From Podarcis erhardii (lineage: Eukaryota): a stretch of DNA of 64,000 bases. The stretch is taken from NCBI GenBank assembly GCA_964252035.1, contig OZ176213.1; one strand, 5' to 3'. The notes below the pieces were generated by a model. That model was given only the letters and a program-made list of their open reading frames with translations, had not been told where the DNA came from and did not search any database. Shown here piece by piece: positions 16,501 through 25,219 of the stretch. The position numbers and the translations under genes are program-made. The stretch's first letter is position 1; every line of letters begins with the position of its first letter.

Positions 16501-19500
16501 CAGCTCGCATCCATCTCCTTAGATAAGGGAGTAGCTGACAGGCAGCCGGCGGGAGAAGTCTCTCCTCTCCTAACTGAATCAGAACTAAGGCTTCAAAGCA
16601 GATAAACATACGTGACCTCATTTTTGCAGCAACTAACAATCAGTCTTGGGGTTATCCTGACTATCAAGATGTTGTTTACAGGCCTTCCAGAACATTTTCA
16701 CTGTTTGGTTCTACACCCCCCTCCTTTTGCTGCACTCTGTACAGGAGCAGGTGACATTTGCTTTCTCCTTTTGCAGGAACTTGACAACTGGGCAGCTGCT
16801 GAGGAAGGTTCCCCTTGGTTCTTCCTACCCAGGATCTGTCTGCCACAAAGCCTATTCTGACTCGGTATATCTCTTAAAGCAGGTTCTGCTCTGTGAAATA
16901 CACAGTACTGCAGTTTGGGCCGGGTCAAGGAGCAAGGCATCTTGGGGAAAAGGGGATCTGGGATTCAAGTTGCACCCTTGCACTTACCTCTCCCGTGCCC
17001 TCCCCTGATGTTCTGGTCTTTGTGTTGCACTAGCTCCCTAGCTCTAGACACCACCAAGGTCCATCTTTGACCTTGAAGGCCCTAAATCCCTTTAGTTCTG
17101 CATTCCTAGGAGCTTGCCTTCCCGCCTACATCCCATTGCAGTGTAAGGCATCAGCAAAGTCTCCATCAATATAGCTTTCTGTTCCCTGGGTTAAAATGTT
17201 TCTGGATTGGCATCTAAGAGCCAGACCAAAACGTTTCCCGATCTGAGATTTTAACAGAAGCTCTGTGTCAGGGTTTCTGGGAGAAGTGAGGAGATGGCAG
17301 AGGAGACGGAAAGCGAGTGGGAGGAGGGAGAGAGAGACGAGGAAGAAGATGACGGAATTCGAAGGGAATCTATGAGCCTAAGCAGTGAGTCAGAGGATTC
17401 CCAAAAGGGAGCTAGCATGATCAGGCGAAAAGCAGGAGAAGAGAGAAGCTGTGAAAAGTCAGGGAAGGAGGGGAGAAAGCCCAGTGAAGCACAGACGCTG
17501 TCAGAGGGGTCTCAGCCGGAACGGAGTAAAGGGGGTGGAGTTGTCAGCCTCTCGGAGGGAGGAGGAACAGGAGAAAACAGAGAGAGGGGGTTGGAGCAAG
17601 GTATTCAGCCGGAAAGGGTAGAGAGTGGAACAGGGGGCAGTATAGAGGACGAAGGAAAGGTCAAAAGCAACGTACGCGCGCCAAGTTCAAACATAGAGGC
17701 GCGCGGAAGTGGGGAAAGCTCAGAGGAGGAGCCCGGCCCCAAAGCCAGAAGGAGGGGGCAGGAGGCGGCAGAGGATTCAGCCTCAGGCGAATCCCGGAAA
17801 GAGAGAACCCAGGGGGGCAGAAAGACCCTGCGGAAAAGAAAGGAGAGGAAGAGGTGGTCTAGAGCCAGGCTATTAAGTTGGTGTGGAGGAGGGGAGGAGT
17901 CAGAGGGGGACTTCGGCGGTCTAACGTGACAGACGTACAGCCACAATGCTGAACTGTGAAAGAAGCAATTATCTTCAATAAACTTTTCCTGTAAGTAAAC
18001 TACAACGGAGTAAGGTCTCTCGTGAGCTGGGACCCACCTGGGTGGTTGTGACAGAAAGTCCCCCTCCCTCTGAAAGCAAAAATTTTTTTTTGCGAAGCTC
18101 ACGAACGGGGCAGCCATGAGTGCTGAGGAACAGCTGGCTGCACTCCGGGATCAGATTACCACTCTCACAACGGCAGTCATTGCTTCGCAGAAGAAGAATG
18201 CTGACTTGGAGAAAGCCTGCCAGGATTTGCAAGCAAGGTGGGAAAATGCGGACAAGGCGGGGACCCCGGGCTCCAGAGCGGAGGGCATTGCGCTTGGAAG
18301 GAGGGGGGGTGCCCTAGTTTCGCATTTTAATGGCAACTTGCAAGACTATCCCAACTTCAGGGCAGATGTCGTGTATGCACTGCATTTACTCCGTCATGAT
18401 TTTAGAGATGAGGAGGAGAGAGTGGGATTTATTGTTTCGCACCTGCATGGGGAGGCCAGGGCTTGGCTACGCAATCTGTGGCGCGAAGATGGACCAGCCC
18501 GTCGCAATGCAGATGCGTTTATCAAGGCAATGGATGCTTGTTTTCAATCCTCTGTGGATAAGGACATTGCGCGCCGGCAGATGCACGGGCTGAGGCAGGG
18601 GAGAGCCACTGTACGCCAATATCATTCTAAATTTTTTGCATTGCTCACCGCCTTAGATTGGCCGAAGGACAGTCTACCGGTCAGGGATCTTTTTTGGGAG
18701 GGATTGAGCCCCTCCGTCAAGGATGAGATCGCAAGGGGGGACAGACCCCAGACCCTGGAAGACGTGGTGCAACGGGCTTTGGCTATAGGAATTCGACATG
18801 AGGGACGTCCGTGGCACGAGGAGGGGGGGCCCCAAGCGCGCGCGCAAGCAAAAGCTCTCCCTTTTGTGCACAGGGATTTCAGCCGTGCGCACCCCTCACC
18901 AATGGGGAAGGAAGGCGAGGAGCCAATGGAGATTGGTGGTGCTAGGGCTCAAAAGCCATCCCAGAGCCCCATCCCTGCTGCAGCCAAAGCGAAGCCTCCT
19001 AGAGGGACCAGGAAGTGTTACATCTGCGACAGTGCACACCATATGGCGAAAGAGTGCCCCCAGAGGCTCCAGAAGCACACTGCAGCACTAGCAACTGTGA
19101 CAGCAGAGGTGCAATCAGAGGAGCAGCTTCAGGGAAACTGCAGTGCCTGGCTGGAAGCAGAGCTACTGGGGCTCAGCCAGGCGGATCTGTAGAGAAGTCC
19201 CCAGCATCCTTGCAGCGCATGGACCCTTTACCTCCCAAACCAGCAGTTTTACTCACAGCAACACTCCAGCTGCCTGATGGGCGACTTCTCGAGGTTCCAA
19301 CAACCATCGATTCGGGAAGCAACGCCGATTTCGTGGGATTACAGTTCGTCAAGCAGCATAACATAGCGCTCCTGCCTGCAACGACGCCTCTGAACGTGGT
19401 CACGGTAGACGGCAGGAAGTTGCTGGGGGGGCAAGTGGTGCAGCAAACCCCTCCCATGATGATGCAAATTGGAGACCATCGAGAGCTTATTAGTTTCAAT

Positions 19501-22500
19501 GTCACCCACTTATCGGACACGCCCATCGTGTTGGGCATGAGTTGGCTGGACAGGCACAGTCCCGCGGTTGCTTGGTACCAGAGGCAGATCACCTTTTGTT
19601 CATCGTATTGCGCCCAGAATTGCATCCAAACCGATCAAGGAGGAGAAGCCGAACAGCAGCTGCATCTGAGTATGGTGCAAGCGGTTCCTCACAAGTACGC
19701 GGAGTTCTTGGAGGTTTTCTGCGAAAAGGAAGCTGACAAATTGCCGCCTCACAGACCTTACGACTGCGCGATTGACTTAGTGCCAGGCGCGCAGTTGCCA
19801 ACTGCCAAGCTGTACTCCATGTCGGAAGACGAGCTGCAAGAGCTTCGGGAGTTCATAGAACACAACCTCAAGCGCGGATTCATCCAGGAATCTAAAGCAG
19901 CAGGAGGCAGTCCTGTTTTCTTTGTGAAAAAGAAAGACACGCCCCAGAAGAGGCTCATTGTGGACTACCGGTTCATAAACAGACTAACTAAGCCCAAGGC
20001 CTTCCCCATGCCCAAAATTGACGACCTTTTGGCTACAGTCAGGAGGGGGAAGATTTTTACCAAGCTGGATTTACGTGGAGCTTACAACCTCATCCGCATC
20101 AGGAAGGGCGACGAGTGGAAGACGGCCATGTTCACTCCTTTGGGCACGTACGAATACAGAGTTATGCCCTTCGGTCTACAAAATGGCAGCCATGTTTTCC
20201 AAGCATTCATGCATCACGTCCTGGCAGGTCTCCTCTACAAGAAGTGTGTCTGTTTTCTCGACGATATCCTGATTTTCTCGGAATCGCCAGAGGATCACGA
20301 TAAGGACGTGAAGGAAGTTCTGCAGAGGCTGAAGGAACACAGGCTGTACGCCAAGTTGGAGAAGTGCCAGTTTGATGTGAGAGAGGTAGATTTCCTTGGC
20401 TACAAGCTGTCCGACGAGGGACTGGCCATGGACAAGACTAAAGTCCAAGCGCTGTTGGACTGGAAAAGCCCTCGAAATCGGAAGGAGGTCCAGAGGTTCA
20501 TCGGCTTTGCCAATTTTTATCGCAAGTTTATTAAAGGTTTTGCAAACGCGACGGCGGCAATCACTGACACCCTCAGTTCCAAGAAGAAGAAGTTCGTCTG
20601 GACCGAACAAGCAGAGCGATCCTTTCGGAAGCTTAAAAGCCTTTTCGCCTCCGAGGAGCAGCTGCTGCACGTGAATCCGGGCAGGCCCATGCGGGTAGAG
20701 ACAGATGCATCAGACAGAGCAGTTGGGGCCGTCCTCTTGCAAGAGGATTCGCAAGGCAACTGGAGACCGGGTGCATTCTACTCCCGGAAGCTCAGCAAGA
20801 CGGAGCGCAACTACACCATATGGGACAGGGAGTTGTTGGCCATTCATGCAGCTTTCAAAGCGTGGCGACACTTCTTGATAGGAGCCAAGCACACGGTGCA
20901 GGTCCGCACGGATCACAAGAACTTGGAGTATTGGCGGACGGCTAAATTGCAAACCCAACGACACATGCGCTGGGCGGAATTCTTTGCGGATTTCGATTTC
21001 AAAATAGAATACATCCCTGGAGACTCCAATGTTATAGCAGACGCGCTGTCCCGAAAGCCTCAATACCTGGAGGAAGTAGCTCCAATCGCAGCGAAGTACA
21101 TTTTCGCACCGCAGGCGTGGACGTGCGCTACCATCGCAGTCGACCTGGACGCGGTGCGACGCGCGCTGCAAGAGGATCAGTTTGCACAATCCAAGATGGA
21201 GGAGCTCCGCAGAGGGTCGCCTGACAACAATGAGTTTCAGTTGCAGGATGGACTTTTGACTCGCAAGGGCGCCCTTTACGTGCCCACCGACGAGCTTCGC
21301 GCCACGGTTTTGCAACAATTGCACGATGCCCCGAGTGCGGGCCATTTCGGCAAAGAGAAGACGATGGAGTTGGTGGCAAGGGACTTTTGGTGGCCCCAGA
21401 TGAGAGGAGAGGTGGCGGACTACGTAGCCAGGTGCGATATCTGCCAGAGGTCCAAACCAGTGCATCAGAAGCAGGCGGGATTGTTAGAACCGCTGGAGAC
21501 ACCGCAGCAACCGTGGGAGAGGGTAGCGTTGGACTTTGTTACAGACCTGCCCAGCTCCAGAGGTAAGACGGCGGTGTTAGTGGTTGTGGACTTGTTCACC
21601 AAGATGGCGCACTTCATTCCTTGTGCCAAGGTGGCGACGGCAGAACAGACCGCAAAGCTCTTCATCGATCACGTCTTCAGAGTGCATGGACTACCGCAGT
21701 CCGTCTTGTCCGACAGGGGGCGCCAATTTGTTTCCACTTTCTGGCGGAAGCTTCTGGGTATCTTGCACGTCAAGATCAACCTGACGTCGGCGAGGCATCC
21801 ACAGACCAACGGTCAAGCGGAGAGGGTCAACGCGATCATGCAGCAGTACCTACGGTGTTACGCCAACCAGCGACCCGCGGCGTGGGTGGACTACCTGCCG
21901 ATGGCTGAGTTCGCCTACAACAACACGAAGCACGCATCCACCGGGGTGACGCCTTTCTTCGCGAACTATGGACGTCATCCCAGAACCTTCCCGAGCTTTA
22001 CAGCACCTGAAGGGGGGGGACCTCAAAATGCCGACCAGTTTGCAGCAGAGTTGCAAGAGGTGCACGAGGAGCTGCGGAGACATTTGGAGCTGGCAAAGCA
22101 GGCGTATAAGGTGCAAGCCGACAAACACAGAAGGGCGGGGGAAGACATTCAGGTTGGGGACTGGGTATGGTTAGCAGCCCACGCGATGCCGGCCAGGTCG
22201 TTGGCCAAAAAGAAGTTAGAACACAGGCAGCTAGGACCATATCAAGTTGAGGCTAAGATCAATCCGGTGGCTTTTCGCCTAGCCCTTCCGGAGGGCTCCA
22301 GGGTGCACCCGGTCTTTCATAGGTCGGTGCTCACTCCCTACAAAGCCCCACACAGGTTTCAAGAGTCAGGAGCACCTCCAGAGCCACGTAGAAGGGCGCC
22401 TGAGAGAGGGGAGTCGCCAAGACCAGAACCTCTTAATGAGGTCACAGAGATACTGGATTCACGATGGGGGGAGGAGGGAGTTGAATATTTTCTCGCCAGG

Positions 22501-25219
22501 GAAGGCACTCCAGTCTCTGCAAATAGCTGGGTGCCGGGTTACGCTTTGGACGAACCCCTGTTGAAGGAGGAGTTTCATGCAATTTTTCCGCACAAACCCA
22601 TGCCCGAGGAGTATTTTGATGATTGGCTTTTCACGCCCACTTTGTCGGGCAGCACGTTCGGGGGTTTCTCCTCGCCCGAGGGCTCTACGCCCAAAACAAG
22701 CCCGACCAGGGATCCCCGCCTGGGGGGGGGAGAGACAAACCCTTATTGGTGGGTGGATCAGCCAAGGGAGGTATGGAGTCAGAGGTGGATGATAGGTCCT
22801 TGGCAGGCAGCGCCAGGAGAAGCAGTGAGGGAGGAAGAGACTGTGATGCCTTCAGGGGGGGAACCCGAGTTCGAACACACGTATACGGAGCTGCCAGAGG
22901 AGAAGATTGACGTGGACACCCGGTATCCTGAACCGACCCAGCAAGAACCACATTTCCCTCAACCTGCACCCAGCGACCGGGAGGGGGGAAGGGGGGGCTT
23001 CGAGGGGGGGATGGATGTCAGGGTTTCTGGGAGAAGTGAGGAGATGGCAGAGGAGACGGAAAGCGAGTGGGAGGAGGGAGAGAGAGACGAGGAAGAAGAT
23101 GACGGAATTCGAAGGGAATCTATGAGCCTAAGCAGTGAGTCAGAGGATTCCCAAAAGGGAGCTAGCATGATCAGGCGAAAAGCAGGAGAAGAGAGAAGCT
23201 GTGAAAAGTCAGGGAAGGAGGGGAGAAAGCCCAGTGAAGCACAGACGCTGTCAGAGGGGTCTCAGCCGGAACGGAGTAAAGGGGGTGGAGTTGTCAGCCT
23301 CTCGGAGGGAGGAGGAACAGGAGAAAACAGAGAGAGGGGGTTGGAGCAAGGTATTCAGCTGGAAAGGGTAGAGAGTGGAACAGGGGGCAGTATAGAGGAC
23401 GAAGGAAAGGTCAAAAGCAACGTACGCGCGCCAAGTTCAAACATAGAGGCGCGCGGAAGTGGGGAAAGCTCAGAGGAGGAGCCCGGCCCCAAAGCCAGAA
23501 GGAGGGGGCAGGAGGCGGCAGAGGATTCAGCCTCAGGCGAATCCCGGAAAGAGAGAACCCAGGGGGGCAGAAAGACCCTGCGGAAAAGAAAGGAGAGGAA
23601 GAGGTGGTCTAGAGCCAGGCTATTAAGTTGGTGTGGAGGAGGGGAGGAGTCAGAGGGGGACTTCGGCGGTCTAACGTGACAGACGTACAGCCACAATGCT
23701 GAACTGTGAAAGAAGCAATTATCTTCAATAAACTTTTCCTGTAAGTAAACTACAACGGAGTAAGGTCTCTCGTGAGCTGGGACCCACCTGGGTGGTTGTG
23801 ACACTCTGCTTTCAGTGCAGCTTTCAGACTGCAGCATGCCTTGAGTCTTAGAGGTGGGTTAGAAACAGAGTCACAGTCTTGTTAAGGGGGTACCACTTTC
23901 CTGAGCCTGGGATCTCCTCTCCCTCCCCATAATTCCACCACCAGTCGCTGCTACTTTTGTTGCTTGCTGAATTGACATTTCTACTTGCTTTTCCTTCCTT
24001 GTGGATCAGGGCCTCCTGTTCGTAGTTCTGAGCCACCCGCATGCCAAGGAGAGCAACTCATGGCTGAACCCTGCCTTCCAGGTGGTTGTGCTCAACCCCA
24101 AGACAGCGAGGAGTGCCAGGCTGATGTCCTTATCCCTTCCCCTGGGAATCACAGGAAGGCAAGTTGTTGTTGTTGGCTGTTGTTGTTTCCACCCATAAAA
24201 CCAGCAGTTAGAGCAGATTGCAGCCAAACTAGGGTATGGGGATCTGACTGCCCATTTAGCTCATTTCTTCCTACTCTGGCTGGCAGCAGCTCCCAGGCTC
24301 TCTGGCAGAGGTTTCTCCCAGTCCTGCTACCTCTGATAACGTTAACTGGGCGCAGCAAGGACTGGGGATGTCCTGTATTCAAGGCATATGCTTCCCCTCC
24401 CCCACTTTCTTTCCAGCCCAGTGGAGCTACATTCCTGTTGATGCTTCTGTAGCTCTAGGTCACTGGGAGGGCACTGCCTCCTTCCTGCCAGCCTCCTGTG
24501 TAAATCTGATTTTAAGCACTGGAGCTTCCTGGACTCTGGTGAAGGGAGCTGCTTCCTCTGCAGCTCTTCATGTCAGGAGTTCCTAATGAAGCCTCTGCTG
24601 GCGTGTGTCATGATGGGTTACCATTCAAGTGCAGACCACTTTCTGCCTGCCCCCTTCTCTGCCCTTTGAACATCCTGGACCTCTTCCACAAACAGCTTTT
24701 TTTCCTGGTTGATGATGAGGATCATTAAAACATGCTGTAACTTCCACTTCTATTTAAGCAGGCTTTTTAAGGATCCAGATTTTACTGCACTGTTGTGATT
24801 TTAAGAAAACAGCCTTGTATAAAGTTGTAGAAAAATGTTAAATCTGTTTTTAATCGTGTGAGTCCTCTGTGTTTCTTCTTTTTATTTTGACTTTATACTC
24901 TTGCATTTTAGTTCTACTTTAATTTTTTTTTTAAATAGTTATGTTATGGGGCAGCATTAATCTGGATATTGCTTTTGGCTCTAGGTACTTGGAGGGTGAA
25001 GTGAAGGGCGCTTCTGCAGCAGCTGTGCTAACATCTGGAACCATTGCTGTCTGGGATTTATTTTGGGGGCAGTGCATGGCTCTGCTGCCCCCCAACTCTG
25101 AAGGGAGCTGGTCTCTTGCCAGATGGTCTGTAACTGACACTTGTCTACTGGCTGGGCAAAAGGACGGCAGTGTTTACATTTACAGTTACACAACAGCTTT
25201 GAGGGACTCGCTTGGTTAG
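2839..25219 (+). CDS. PALB2: Partner and localizer of BRCA2, complete 13-exon CDS (about 1230 aa)
   Basis: Exons 2839-2892, 6256-6315, 6794-6893, 7816-9471, 10317-11065, 12562-12636, 13618-13779, 14067-14152, 15325-15486, 15658-15774, 16777-16864, 24010-24158, 24985-25219; total 3693 nt, in frame. Contains the coiled coil [15 protein letters not shown], Ch[28 protein letters not shown]15-binding [18 protein letters not shown], and WD40 exons 7-13 (exons 7-12 have human-like sizes 162/86/162/117/88/149). Confidence 0.96.
3277..3446. mobile_element. Palindromic hAT-type MITE copy interrupted by a U2 fragment
   Basis: Arms tctttctcaaccttggat / cccaaggttgagaaaga; internal ctcccatcat...atgatgggagttgtag as in the copies at 58526-58661 and about 63340-63480. 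Confidence 0.65.
3327..3365 (+). pseudogene. 3'-truncated U2 snRNA pseudogene (first 39 nt)
   Basis: ATCGCTTCTCGGCCTTTTGGCTAAGATCAAGTGTAGTAT is the vertebrate U2 5' end, including the branch-point recognition GTAGTA. No Sm site, and no DSE/PSE promoter seen. Confidence 0.93.
3888..5547 (+). mobile_element. 5'-truncated RTE/BovB LINE (RT domain) with 11-bp TSD
   Basis: ORFs 3980-4372 and 4406-5536 are in one frame, broken by a single TGA at 4370-4372. Motifs [32 protein letters not shown]; BovB-type tail GACTAAAC-(AAC)n; TSD AGGGCAATTTC at 3877-3887 and 5548-5558. Confidence 0.93.
5566..5892. mobile_element. Tc1/mariner (pogo/Tigger-like) MITE
   Basis: 22-bp TIR CAGTGGTGCCTCGCAAGACGAA / TTCGTCTTGCGGGGCACCACTG (1 mismatch), TA on both flanks, internal TCGTCTTGCGAAGCAAGCCCAT repeats. 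Confidence 0.9.
6440..6715 (+). mobile_element. L2-type LINE 3' fragment
   Basis: ttctgcagtggcccctcgcttgtggaat...tttaggtgccaggcaaaaa followed by an (AAT)-rich tail; a similar copy lies at about 50160-50450. Confidence 0.55.
7435..7585. mobile_element. Tc1/pogo-type MITE, short subfamily
   Basis: TA-CAGTCGTACCTC ... GAGGTACCACTG-TA ends. Confidence 0.75.
7816..9471 (+). CDS. PALB2: PALB2 large exon 4 (disordered region plus ChAM motif)
   Basis: ORF 7896-9479 extended back to the acceptor ttcacag at 7815; donor CGAG|gtatgt; ChAM motif present. Confidence 0.92.
9861..9901. repeat. (TGAT)10 microsatellite
   Basis: Directly visible. Confidence 0.95.
10317..11065 (+). CDS. PALB2: PALB2 exon 5 (MRG15-binding FxLP region)
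   Basis: Acceptor ttgcag at 10316, donor ATG|gttggt; phase 1 to 0 as in human. Confidence 0.88.
12231..12261. repeat. (AAT)n microsatellite next to an L2-like 3' end
   Basis: Directly visible; followed by tttatatcccgccctccc...gggtggctaaca. Confidence 0.9.
14575..14795 (+). mobile_element. CR1-type 3' fragment
   Basis: ggctactagtcatgatggcta...ttgtgggcttcccagaagcatctggttggcc...ggacaagatggg; related copies at about 35700-35930 (-), 41800-41920 (-), 49010-49260 (-) and 59280-59420 (+). Confidence 0.55.
17266..18053 (+). repeat. 5' LTR (U3 about 17266-17902; R/U5 to 18053)
   Basis: TGTCA...TGACA termini; TATA-like TATTAA 17871-17876; AATAAA 17977-17982. Confidence 0.97.
17294..17929 (+). CDS. 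211-aa low-complexity acidic/basic ORF encoded inside the LTR U3 (function unknown)
   Basis: GAGATGG Kozak-like start; open across almost the whole U3. The copy in the 3' LTR (23044-23679) is in frame with pol. Confidence 0.4.
   Translation: MAEETESEWEEGERDEEEDDGIRRESMSLSSESEDSQKGASMIRRKAGEERSCEKSGKEGRKPSEAQTLSEGSQPERSKGGGVVSLSEGGGTGENRERGLEQGIQPERVESGTGGSIEDEGKVKSNVRAPSSNIEARGSGESSEEEPGPKARRRGQEAAEDSASGESRKERTQGGRKTLRKRKERKRWSRARLLSWCGGGEESEGDFGGLT
18116..19192 (+). CDS. Gag (capsid plus CCHC zinc knuckle), 358 aa
   Basis: Retrotrans_gag/PEG10-like segment ([33 protein letters not shown]) and the knuckle [14 protein letters not shown]. Confidence 0.95.
   Translation: MSAEEQLAALRDQITTLTTAVIASQKKNADLEKACQDLQARWENADKAGTPGSRAEGIALGRRGGALVSHFNGNLQDYPNFRADVVYALHLLRHDFRDEEERVGFIVSHLHGEARAWLRNLWREDGPARRNADAFIKAMDACFQSSVDKDIARRQMHGLRQGRATVRQYHSKFFALLTALDWPKDSLPVRDLFWEGLSPSVKDEIARGDRPQTLEDVVQRALAIGIRHEGRPWHEEGGPQARAQAKALPFVHRDFSRAHPSPMGKEGEEPMEIGGARAQKPSQSPIPAAAKAKPPRGTRKCYICDSAHHMAKECPQRLQKHTAALATVTAEVQSEEQLQGNCSAWLEAELLGLSQADL
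19138..23679 (+). CDS. Pol (PR-RT-RNase H-integrase-chromodomain plus long tail), expressed by -1 frameshift from gag
   Basis: Protease IDSG (19309), RT FLDD (20254-20265), RNase H ETDAS/DRELLAI/TDHKNL, integrase HHCC (LHDAPSAGH...CDIC), DDE (LDFVTDL, SDRG, QAERVN), GPY, chromo-like 22435-22590; no stop until 23677-23679. Confidence 0.95.
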   Translation: MQCLAGSRATGAQPGGSVEKSPASLQRMDPLPPKPAVLLTATLQLPDGRLLEVPTTIDSGSNADFVGLQFVKQHNIALLPATTPLNVVTVDGRKLLGGQVVQQTPPMMMQIGDHRELISFNVTHLSDTPIVLGMSWLDRHSPAVAWYQRQITFCSSYCAQNCIQTDQGGEAEQQLHLSMVQAVPHKYAEFLEVFCEKEADKLPPHRPYDCAIDLVPGAQLPTAKLYSMSEDELQELREFIEHNLKRGFIQESKAAGGSPVFFVKKKDTPQKRLIVDYRFINRLTKPKAFPMPKIDDLLATVRRGKIFTKLDLRGAYNLIRIRKGDEWKTAMFTPLGTYEYRVMPFGLQNGSHVFQAFMHHVLAGLLYKKCVCFLDDILIFSESPEDHDKDVKEVLQRLKEHRLYAKLEKCQFDVREVDFLGYKLSDEGLAMDKTKVQALLDWKSPRNRKEVQRFIGFANFYRKFIKGFANATAAITDTLSSKKKKFVWTEQAERSFRKLKSLFASEEQLLHVNPGRPMRVETDASDRAVGAVLLQEDSQGNWRPGAFYSRKLSKTERNYTIWDRELLAIHAAFKAWRHFLIGAKHTVQVRTDHKNLEYWRTAKLQTQRHMRWAEFFADFDFKIEYIPGDSNVIADALSRKPQYLEEVAPIAAKYIFAPQAWTCATIAVDLDAVRRALQEDQFAQSKMEELRRGSPDNNEFQLQDGLLTRKGALYVPTDELRATVLQQLHDAPSAGHFGKEKTMELVARDFWWPQMRGEVADYVARCDICQRSKPVHQKQAGLLEPLETPQQPWERVALDFVTDLPSSRGKTAVLVVVDLFTKMAHFIPCAKVATAEQTAKLFIDHVFRVHGLPQSVLSDRGRQFVSTFWRKLLGILHVKINLTSARHPQTNGQAERVNAIMQQYLRCYANQRPAAWVDYLPMAEFAYNNTKHASTGVTPFFANYGRHPRTFPSFTAPEGGGPQNADQFAAELQEVHEELRRHLELAKQAYKVQADKHRRAGEDIQVGDWVWLAAHAMPARSLAKKKLEHRQLGPYQVEAKINPVAFRLALPEGSRVHPVFHRSVLTPYKAPHRFQESGAPPEPRRRAPERGESPRPEPLNEVTEILDSRWGEEGVEYFLAREGTPVSANSWVPGYALDEPLLKEEFHAIFPHKPMPEEYFDDWLFTPTLSGSTFGGFSSPEGSTPKTSPTRDPRLGGGETNPYWWVDQPREVWSQRWMIGPWQAAPGEAVREEETVMPSGGEPEFEHTYTELPEEKIDVDTRYPEPTQQEPHFPQPAPSDREGGRGGFEGGMDVRVSGRSEEMAEETESEWEEGERDEEEDDGIRRESMSLSSESEDSQKGASMIRRKAGEERSCEKSGKEGRKPSEAQTLSEGSQPERSKGGGVVSLSEGGGTGENRERGLEQGIQLERVESGTGGSIEDEGKVKSNVRAPSSNIEARGSGESSEEEPGPKARRRGQEAAEDSASGESRKERTQGGRKTLRKRKERKRWSRARLLSWCGGGEESEGDFGGLT
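23016..23803 (+). repeat. 3' LTR
   Basis: Identical to the 5' LTR except T at 23360 versus C at 17610 (CpG site). Confidence 0.97.

What the first reader, a model, noticed from the sequence alone, without database searches (positions are those of the whole stretch)
17871..18104. tRNA-independent self-priming structure: the first 11 nt of the transcript pair with the PBS
No TGG-type tRNA PBS follows the 5' LTR. Instead 18056-18066 (AAGTCCCCCTC) is the exact reverse complement of 17903-17913 (GAGGGGGACTT), which begins 32 nt after the TATA-like TATTAA, i.e. at the predicted TSS. The primer 3' end would sit 2 nt (GA) from the LTR edge, the usual spacing. A second 9-bp stem (18020-18028 TCGTGAGCT with 18096-18104 AGCTCACGA) links U5 to the leader (all seen). 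This matches the self-priming mechanism defined for fission-yeast Tf1: an 11-nt primer released by RNase H plus a U5-leader stem (known). Here it occurs in an intact vertebrate element.
Basis: partly seen in the sequence, partly recalled or inferred. Interest (0 to 1): 0.72.

Follow-up and report, generated by a model that had tools for sequence, protein, structure and literature searches.

The report
Self-priming sushi-type retrotransposon in a lizard
An intact, very young lizard jumping gene of the Tf1/sushi kind appears to start copying its RNA by folding its own 5' end onto the primer site instead of borrowing a tRNA. This trick is already described for the group, vertebrate members included, so it is a good reading of an ordinary case.

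Summary
17903-17913 is the exact reverse complement of 18056-18066, which starts 2 nt after the 5' LTR edge. 18020-18028 is the exact complement of 18096-18104. The leader contains no TGG.

The host element (17266-23803) is an intact Ty3/gypsy chromovirus-type retrotransposon:
- 788-bp LTRs with one mismatch and a 5-bp target duplication.
- A gag resembling PEG10 gag, and a PEG10-type -1 slippery site.
- PR-RT-RH-IN with a Tf2-1-type SH3 domain and a degenerate chromodomain.
- Closest proteins come from the lizard Podarcis muralis.

The 11-mer alone is weaker evidence than it looks, because the LTR is purine-rich: 4-6% of shuffles give one. Three things make self-priming the best reading:
- It lies 32 nt after the only TATA-like box, at a TCAG initiator.
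- The second stem is independent (p about 0.01) and pseudoknotted to the first.
- Several unrelated relatives show the same layout with different sequences and with compensatory changes.

The transcription start could not be tested because no RNA runs were offered. The family's copies show no variation in the arms, so there is no within-family covariation.

The literature already calls self-priming a common feature of Tf1/sushi elements, vertebrates included, so this is a new member of a known kind. The scan noted the same signature on other pieces of this genome; none was followed up.

The parts
17261..17265 (+). Target-site duplication CTCTG (left copy; right copy at 23804-23808)
   Evidence: the same 5 nt flank both LTRs.
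17266..18053 (+). 5' LTR, 788 bp, TGTCA...TGACA ends; 787/788 identical to the 3' LTR
   Evidence: direct repeat at offset 5750 with a single mismatch at 17610.
17871..17876 (+). TATA-like box TATTAA, the only A/T hexamer in the LTR upstream of the poly(A) signal region
   Evidence: A/T hexamers occur only at 17871, 17967 and 17977. It lies 32 nt before the self-primer; relatives have TATA 28-35 nt before theirs.
17900..17905 (+). Initiator-like TCAGAG; predicted +1 at A17902 or G17903
   Evidence: sequence. A TCAG motif sits at or next to the primer arm in L008, L013, L039, L044, L072 and L076. This is inference; no RNA data.
17903..17913 (+). Putative self-primer, the first 11 nt of R (GAGGGGGACTT)
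   Evidence: exact complement of 18056-18066; mean pairing probability 0.92 in the leader RNA ensemble.
17977..17982 (+). Poly(A) signal AATAAA; R therefore runs from about 17903 to about 18000
   Evidence: The poly(A) site itself is inferred.
17989..18054 (+). U5 stem-loop abutting the PBS; its apical hairpin (stem 18014-18019/18029-18034) presents 18020-18028 as a 9-nt loop
   Evidence: present in the MFE, centroid and constrained folds.
18020..18028 (+). 5' arm of the second duplex (TCGTGAGCT), the loop of the U5 hairpin
   Evidence: exact 9-nt complement of 18096-18104, p about 0.01; crosses the primer:PBS duplex (pseudoknot).
18054..18055 (+). GA spacer between LTR edge and PBS
   Evidence: Relatives have spacers of 0-2 nt.
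18056..18066 (+). Primer-binding site (AAGTCCCCCTC), not of the tRNA (TGG) type
18076..18093 (+). Local A/T hairpin in the leader (GCAAAAA...TTTTTGC); the only polymorphic spot of the leader among copies
   Evidence: 7-bp helix; 18082 A>T and T-run length variants.
18096..18104 (+). 3' arm of the second duplex (AGCTCACGA), 12 nt before the gag ATG
18116..19192 (+). gag ORF (358 aa): Ty3 capsid / Retrotrans_gag, zinc knuckle, resembles PEG10 capsid
   Evidence: 7lga PEG10, E 7e-5.
19132..19138 (+). -1 frameshift slippery heptamer G GGA AAC in the gag frame, inside the gag/pol overlap
   Evidence: sequence plus frame arithmetic (gag frame 2, pol frame 1). That PEG10 uses this heptamer is from my own knowledge.
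19015..23679 (+). pol ORF (PR, RT, RNase H, IN with Tf2-1-type SH3, degenerate chromodomain); stays open through the PPT and 3' U3 into R
23002..23015 (+). Polypurine tract abutting the 3' LTR (a longer purine run starts at 22979)
   Evidence: sequence.
23016..23803 (+). 3' LTR; carries the second copy of the primer sequence at 23653-23663

Best explanation
Window 17266-23803 is an intact, recently inserted LTR retrotransposon of the chromovirus (Tf1/sushi-like, fungi/vertebrate) lineage in a lacertid-type lizard genome. It most likely primes minus-strand cDNA synthesis with its own RNA.

Proposed steps:
1. Transcription starts at about 17902/17903, 31-32 nt after TATTAA (inferred).
2. The first 11-12 nt of R fold back onto the PBS at 18056-18066, 2 nt past U5 (the complementarity is shown; the pairing is predicted at P about 0.9).
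3. The fold is held by a U5 stem-loop abutting the PBS and by a pseudoknotted 9-bp contact between the loop of that hairpin (18020-18028) and the leader (18096-18104). This gives the same crossing topology as the Tf1 'pretzel' (inferred).
4. The element's RNase H then cuts after nt 11 and RT extends the freed 3' OH through U5 and R (inferred by analogy with Tf1; not tested).
5. Strand transfer uses the roughly 100-nt R.
For: Anatomy of the element:
- Exact 11-nt and 9-nt complements at the stated places; no TGG in the leader.
- The primer:PBS duplex is in the MFE and centroid, with mean pair probability 0.92.
- TATTAA is the only A/T hexamer in U3, 32 nt upstream.
- Intact element with LTRs 787/788 identical and a TSD.
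- Ty3/gypsy domains with SH3_Tf2-1, plus a chromodomain remnant that aligns to the Anolis chromodomain.
- gag resembles PEG10.

Placement: the tree puts it in a vertebrate clade next to Batrachochytrium and metagenome chromoviruses.

Relatives with defined LTR ends:
- Anchored complements of 12-13 nt in L013, L039, L072 and L076 (p 0.003 or less).
- 11 nt in the fish-like L008, and 8-13 bp with a G:U pair or a bulge in L044, L079 and the six-member family A.
- TATA lies 28-35 nt before the arm in six of them.
- Compensatory changes occur in family A (primer GATC / PBS GATC versus GAAC / GTTC).
- A second duplex covaries at a fixed position.

Literature: self-priming is described as a common feature of Tf1/sushi elements from yeast to vertebrates, and it needs a 3-duplex pretzel (PMC10085805, PMC6317226, PMC4600332, PMC7175516).
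Against: - No RNA run was offered, so the 5' end of the transcript is unmeasured.
- The LTR is purine-rich and the PBS pyrimidine-rich. An exact 11-mer arises in 4-6% of shuffles, and duplex energy is not exceptional (p = 0.27).
- Copies in three sequenced organisms show no variant at 5% or more anywhere in 17849-18081, so there is no covariation inside the family.
- The 9-bp duplex has negligible probability in nested folding (0.005) because it competes with or crosses other helices.
- About ten relatives showed no clear signature, though several have uncertain LTR ends.
- No reference Tf1 or sushi-ichi sequence could be included in the tree.
- Host tRNAs could not be screened: there are none in the window.
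Confidence: 0.8

Rival explanations
1. The complementarity is a by-product of low-complexity composition (GA-rich LTR, C/T-rich leader). The real primer is something else, such as an internal or fragment tRNA site or another host RNA.
For: 4-6% of LTR shuffles give an anchored exact match of 11 nt or more, and the duplex-energy test is not significant. Host tRNAs could not be checked (my ARAGORN pass over the fetched loci returned nothing).
Against: The match sits 32 nt after the only TATA-like box, with a TCAG initiator at its 5' edge. There is no TGG in the leader. An independent 9-bp duplex has p about 0.01. The same architecture appears in unrelated relatives with different sequences and compensatory changes. 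The published rule for the group says the same.
Confidence: 0.1
2. The 5'-end:leader pairing is real but serves another step, such as genome packaging or dimerisation, control of gag translation, or protection of the 5' end. Priming would then use a different mechanism.
For: The 9-bp arm ends 12 nt before the gag ATG, and the structure would enclose the whole 5' UTR. Nothing here measures priming.
Against: The 3' arm sits exactly where a PBS must be, 2 nt from the LTR edge, and no other PBS candidate exists. In Tf1 the same duplex is the primer (PMC7175516).
Confidence: 0.07

Closest known systems
Tf1 / Tf2 of Schizosaccharomyces pombe (founding self-priming LTR retrotransposons)
   Same: An 11-nt 5'-end:PBS duplex just after the LTR, no tRNA PBS, and extra duplexes linking LTR sequence downstream of the primer to PBS-flanking sequence with a crossing ('pretzel') topology. 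Ty3/gypsy order with a chromodomain-type integrase tail and a Tf2-1-type SH3.
   Different: - Host is a lizard, not a yeast.
- gag and pol are separated by a -1 frameshift rather than forming one ORF.
- The second duplex lies 30 nt beyond the PBS, after a local hairpin, and pairs with a hairpin loop in U5 rather than with PBS-adjacent sequence.
- The chromodomain is degenerate (Pfam 15 bits against a cut-off of 25).
- The LTR is 788 bp and GA-rich, and pol stays open into it.
- No biochemical evidence here.
sushi-ichi and other vertebrate Tf1/sushi elements (Butler et al. 2001, J Mol Evol 52:260; the source lineage of PEG10/RTL genes)
   Same: A vertebrate chromovirus with proposed self-priming (as cited in PMC6317226, PMC4600332, PMC10085805). 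gag resembles PEG10 capsid and DUF4939. The G GGA AAC -1 slippery site matches PEG10 (the PEG10 heptamer is from my own knowledge).
   Different: I could not fetch sushi-ichi or read Butler et al. 2001, so direct sequence and structure comparison is missing. The nearest proteins available are squamate (Podarcis 77-91%, Anolis 46%), amphibian and fish (38-43%).
Tj1 (S. japonicus), Tosmo/Tcry elements, Tcn1-clade elements of fungi and non-seed plants
   Same: Self-priming predicted from the same sequence logic: PBS complementary to an LTR segment taken as the RNA 5' end.
   Different: Different hosts and different arm sequences. Tj1 transposition has been shown experimentally; nothing has been shown here.

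Membership tests
Ty3/gypsy (Metaviridae) LTR retrotransposon | LTRs with TG...CA ends, TSD, PBS and PPT, gag, and pol in the order PR-RT-RH-IN | tested here: met
   LTRs, 5-bp TSD, PPT; RVP_2, RVT_1, RNase H, Integrase_H2C2, rve, in that order; Ty3 Gag-Pol 7q5b, E 6e-141.
Chromovirus, Tf1/sushi (fungi/vertebrate) group | Chromodomain at the integrase C-terminus | tested here: inconclusive
   The Pfam Chromo hit is below threshold (15.1 bits against 25.1, E 0.022). The segment aligns to the Anolis chromodomain (E 1e-6) and shares columns invariant in A1, but the KW-type aromatic position is not kept. The 55%-identical Podarcis relative has a significant chromodomain. I read it as a decayed chromodomain.
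Chromovirus, Tf1/sushi (fungi/vertebrate) group | Phylogenetic placement of RT-RH-IN with reference Tf1/sushi elements | tested here: inconclusive
   The tree nests it in a vertebrate clade (95 SH-aLRT) beside Batrachochytrium and metagenome chromoviruses that carry self-priming signatures. No Tf1, sushi-ichi or outgroup sequence was available, and the tree is unrooted. SH3_Tf2-1 is present.
Tf1-type self-priming | No tRNA-type PBS; the PBS just after the 5' LTR is complementary to about 11 nt inside the LTR | tested here: met
Tf1-type self-priming | The complementary LTR segment is the very 5' end of the transcript | not testable with these tools
   No RNA run was offered. The only support is indirect: TATTAA at -32 and a TCAG initiator, with the same spacing in relatives.
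Tf1-type self-priming | Additional duplexes between LTR sequence downstream of the primer and sequence flanking the PBS ('pretzel') | tested here: inconclusive
   A U5 stem-loop abuts the PBS. A 9-bp duplex between U5 and the leader has p about 0.01 and crosses the central duplex. It lies 30 nt from the PBS rather than adjacent. There is no covariation within the family; a covarying equivalent is seen only in distant family A.
Tf1-type self-priming | RNase H cleavage between nt 11 and 12, then extension of the freed primer | not testable with these tools
   This is a biochemical property. An RNase H domain is present.

The most novel reading that the evidence does not exclude
This lizard lineage may run a modified pretzel. 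The PBS-adjacent third duplex would be replaced by a long-range contact between the complete 9-nt loop of a U5 hairpin and a leader segment just before the gag ATG, which would couple priming to gag translation. Because pol stays open into the 3' LTR, the primer sequence would also be under protein-coding constraint. This would be a lineage-specific variant of self-priming in an element that still looks mobile in a vertebrate.
Probability: 0.25. Interest if true: 0.4.

Novelty: new member of a known kind. Interest (0 to 1): 0.25.

Why it matters
It adds a squamate example, apparently still active, to the list of LTR retrotransposons that dispense with a tRNA primer. Such elements should be blind to host defences that target the tRNA primer-binding site, for example 3'-tRNA fragments. 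An intact, nearly polymorphism-free family would make a convenient natural system for studying self-priming in an amniote. It does not change the current picture: self-priming is already regarded as a common trait of the Tf1/sushi group, vertebrates included.

Tried and rejected
This blocked the planned covariation test among close vertebrate relatives.
- The look-up of sequencing runs returned no RNA run. Read laying therefore gave contigs only, with no starts or ends of molecules and no TSS evidence.
- Within-family covariation was not possible: no variant at 5% or more in either arm.
- An untargeted scan of all 81 loci for CA-anchored 11-mers with a reverse complement elsewhere did not discriminate (24 loci against 21 and 19 for the reversed and complemented controls). 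I dropped it.
- The ARAGORN pass over the fetched loci parsed no tRNAs, and the window has none, so the tRNA-complementarity test was not done.
- Rfam found nothing in 17200-18500 except a chance snoRNA match (E 0.23). The bacterial promoter and terminator scan is irrelevant here. The phage search was blank.
- A ubiquitin match of pol residues 35-93 is inflated by the repeats of polyubiquitin (single-repeat i-Evalue 3-5) and overlaps the start of the protease fold. I rejected it.
- The primary Tf1 papers and Butler et al. 2001 are not in the held library. Their content is cited second-hand.
- align_proteins printed a consensus line by itself. I did not use, save or propagate it.
Full report
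**1. The observation**

- GAGGGGGACTT occupies 17903-17913. Its exact reverse complement AAGTCCCCCTC occupies 18056-18066.
- The 11-mer occurs nowhere else in the 64-kb window except in the 3' LTR copy at 23653 (0.11 matches expected).
- A direct repeat at offset 5750 defines the LTRs as 17266-18053 and 23016-23803. They are 788 bp long with a single mismatch at 17610.
- The LTR ends are TGTCA...TGACA, and a 5-bp target duplication CTCTG flanks the element.
- The PBS candidate therefore begins 2 nt (GA) after the LTR edge.
- The neighbouring bases on both sides do not pair, so the duplex is exactly 11 bp.
- TATTAA lies at 17871-17876. The 9-mers at 18020-18028 and 18096-18104 are exact complements.
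- There is no TGG between the LTR and the gag ATG at 18116.

**2. How unlikely is it?**

Less unlikely than it looks.
- The LTR is 70% purine, and the leader starts with a C/T run.
- An exact complement of 11 nt or more, anchored 0-8 nt after the LTR, appears in 6.5% of dinucleotide shuffles of the LTR. With offsets 0-6 it is 3.7%, and 0.4% when the leader is shuffled.
- By duplex energy the real LTR is not exceptional (p = 0.27).

Position is what lifts the observation.
- The LTR has only three A/T hexamers: TATTAA at 17871, AATTAT at 17967 and the poly(A) signal AATAAA at 17977.
- A promoter-based guess of the start, made without reference to the PBS, therefore falls at about 17896-17906.
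- The sequence there is TCAGAG, an initiator-like motif with A at 17902.
- The joint chance is of order 1e-3 (my estimate).
- The second stem is independent evidence (p about 0.01 by shuffling either side).

**3. The element**

- gag (18116-19192) matches Ty3_capsid, Retrotrans_gag and a zinc knuckle. More weakly it matches DUF4939, and the only PDB sequence hit is the PEG10 capsid.
- pol (ORF 19015-23679, in the -1 frame) carries RVP_2, RVT_1, RNase H, Integrase_H2C2, rve and SH3_Tf2-1. It matches Ty3 Gag-Pol at E 6e-141.
- In the gag/pol overlap the heptamer G GGA AAC lies at 19132-19138, in the X XXY YYZ register of the gag frame. From my own knowledge, this is the slippery site used by PEG10.
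- The integrase tail has a sub-threshold chromodomain hit. It aligns to the significant chromodomain of an Anolis relative and keeps columns invariant in a 12-protein alignment. I read it as a decayed chromodomain.
- The best database proteins are from Podarcis muralis (77-86% over the whole pol, 91% over RT-IN). Next come other Podarcis families (55%), Anolis (46%), amphibians, fishes, tuatara and the chytrid Batrachochytrium (38-43%).
- In a query-anchored RT-RH-IN tree the window sits in a squamate clade. That clade lies inside a vertebrate clade (95 SH-aLRT), next to Batrachochytrium and metagenome chromoviruses.
- This is the composition the literature calls the fungi/vertebrate cluster, equivalent to the Tf1/sushi group (PMC10085805). 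I could not add Tf1 or sushi-ichi themselves.

**4. RNA structure**

- Folding 17903-18125 as RNA puts the 5' end on the PBS in both the MFE and the centroid structure. The mean pair probability is 0.92, and it is robust to moving the assumed start 1-20 nt upstream.
- The overall energy is unremarkable (z = -1.1).
- Directly before the PBS, 17989-18054 forms a composite U5 stem-loop. Its apical hairpin (GGUCUC/GGGACC) displays exactly the nine bases 18020-18028 as its loop.
- Their complement at 18096-18104 lies outside the primer:PBS helix, so the two duplexes cross. A nested fold with both is impossible.
- That crossing topology is what the literature describes for Tf1. A central self-primer:PBS duplex is joined by two duplexes that link PBS-flanking sequence to LTR sequence downstream of the primer, the 'pretzel' (PMC10085805).
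- The difference here is that the outer arm lies 30 nt beyond the PBS, after a local A/T hairpin (18076-18093).

**5. Relatives**

*Contigs of public runs from three organisms were laid on 17266-18400.*
- About 33 variable sites fall in U3 (17464-17848).
- None at 5% or more falls in 17849-18081, which covers both arms of both duplexes.
- The only leader variation is at 18082 and in the T run.
- The arms are therefore conserved, but within-family covariation is unavailable.
- LTR k-mer depth is about 2.1 times that of gag.

*I then fetched 80 metagenome loci and one IMG/VR locus with an alignment of pol.* Among 22 with LTR pairs, several independent families repeat the layout with unrelated sequences.

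| Family | Complement | Spacer after LTR | Shuffle p |
|---|---|---|---|
| L013 | 13 nt | 0 | 0.000 |
| L039 | 12 nt | 2 | 0.000 |
| L072 / L076 | 12 nt | 1 | 0.003 or less |
| L044 | same duplex as L039, with one G:U pair | - | - |
| L079 | 8 nt | - | - |
| Family A (six members) | 13 bp with a bulge or a G:U pair | - | - |

- In six of these a TATA box lies 28-35 nt before the LTR arm. The window's spacing is 32.
- Most arms start at or within a few bases of a TCAG motif.
- Family A shows compensatory change. The primer/PBS pair is GATC/GATC in four members and GAAC/GTTC in two.
- Family A also has a second 8-bp duplex at a fixed position whose sequence differs between subgroups while staying complementary.
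- L008 groups with fish proteins in the tree. Its sequence 1 nt after the LTR edge has an exact 11-nt complement in the region upstream of the 3' LTR repeat, about 29 nt after a TTAAG-type box. Its two LTRs agree only over 115 bp, so that contig may be chimeric.
- About ten loci gave no clear signature, and several of these have uncertain LTR ends.

**6. Mechanism proposed**

*Shown:* the complementarities, their positions, the intact coding capacity including RNase H, and the conservation of the arms among copies.

*Inferred, by analogy with Tf1:*
- The start is at 17902/17903.
- The RNA folds back on itself.
- RNase H cleaves after nt 11 (PMC7175516).
- The 11-nt primer is extended through GA, U5 and R to nt 12.
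- Transfer to the 3' R follows. R is about 100 nt, given AATAAA at 17977.

**7. Comparison with what is known**

[quoted passage not shown] It is explicitly said to have been described in elements from yeast and vertebrates, citing Butler et al. 2001, Lin and Levin 1997 and Goodwin and Poulter 2001 (PMC6317226; PMC4600332; PMC10085805). I could not read the primary papers.

**8. Earlier notes of this scan**

The same first-stage signature has been noted on other pieces of this genome (s1-217760, s1-229670, s1-244799, s1-254950, s1-217752, s1-229697). None had been followed up. I did not see their sequences and do not count them as evidence.

**9. Verdict**

It awaits a measured RNA 5' end. Novelty is low.

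Noticed in passing
window 19132-19138: The heptamer G GGA AAC sits in the gag zero frame inside the 178-nt gag/pol overlap, so pol is reached by a -1 frameshift. From my own knowledge, this is the slippery site of the domesticated sushi-type gene PEG10.
   Followed up: partly
window 22979-23679: The pol frame stays open through the polypurine tract and all of the 3' U3. It stops only at 23677-23679, 24 nt into R, so the 3' copy of the primer sequence (23653-23663) lies inside an ORF. The same frame is open in the 5' LTR (17294-17929, 211 aa). GA-rich, T-poor composition may explain it. This was noted separately by the scan (s1-254807).
   Followed up: partly
window 22435-22580 (pol residues about 1141-1190): The chromodomain of this subfamily is degenerate (Pfam 15 bits; one aromatic-cage position is not kept). 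A 55%-identical Podarcis family and the Anolis relatives keep a significant chromodomain.
   Followed up: partly
window 17464-17848 versus 17849-18081: Among the copies in public runs, variation is concentrated in U3 (about 33 sites), while R, U5, the PBS and the first leader bases show none at 5% or more. At 17603 every laid contig reads G where the window has A.
   Followed up: no
window 17899-17900: In a second organism's run (X4), two contigs that match U3 perfectly diverge into unrelated sequence at 17899/17900, 3 nt before the predicted RNA start. This may be a graph artefact of the GGAGG repeats, or a sub-family with a different R.
   Followed up: no
window 19117-19293 (pol residues 35-93): There is a weak resemblance to ubiquitin. 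The high total scores arise only because polyubiquitin repeats are summed; each repeat scores about 11 bits (i-Evalue 3-5). The stretch also overlaps the N-terminal strand of the protease. Probably spurious.
   Followed up: yes
L011, L012, L017, L036, L047, L061 (metagenome loci): This is a six-member family of probably fungal chromoviruses from root-associated metagenomes. Its self-primer:PBS duplex and a second leader:R duplex both covary between two subgroups, a clean natural illustration of the pretzel.
   Followed up: partly
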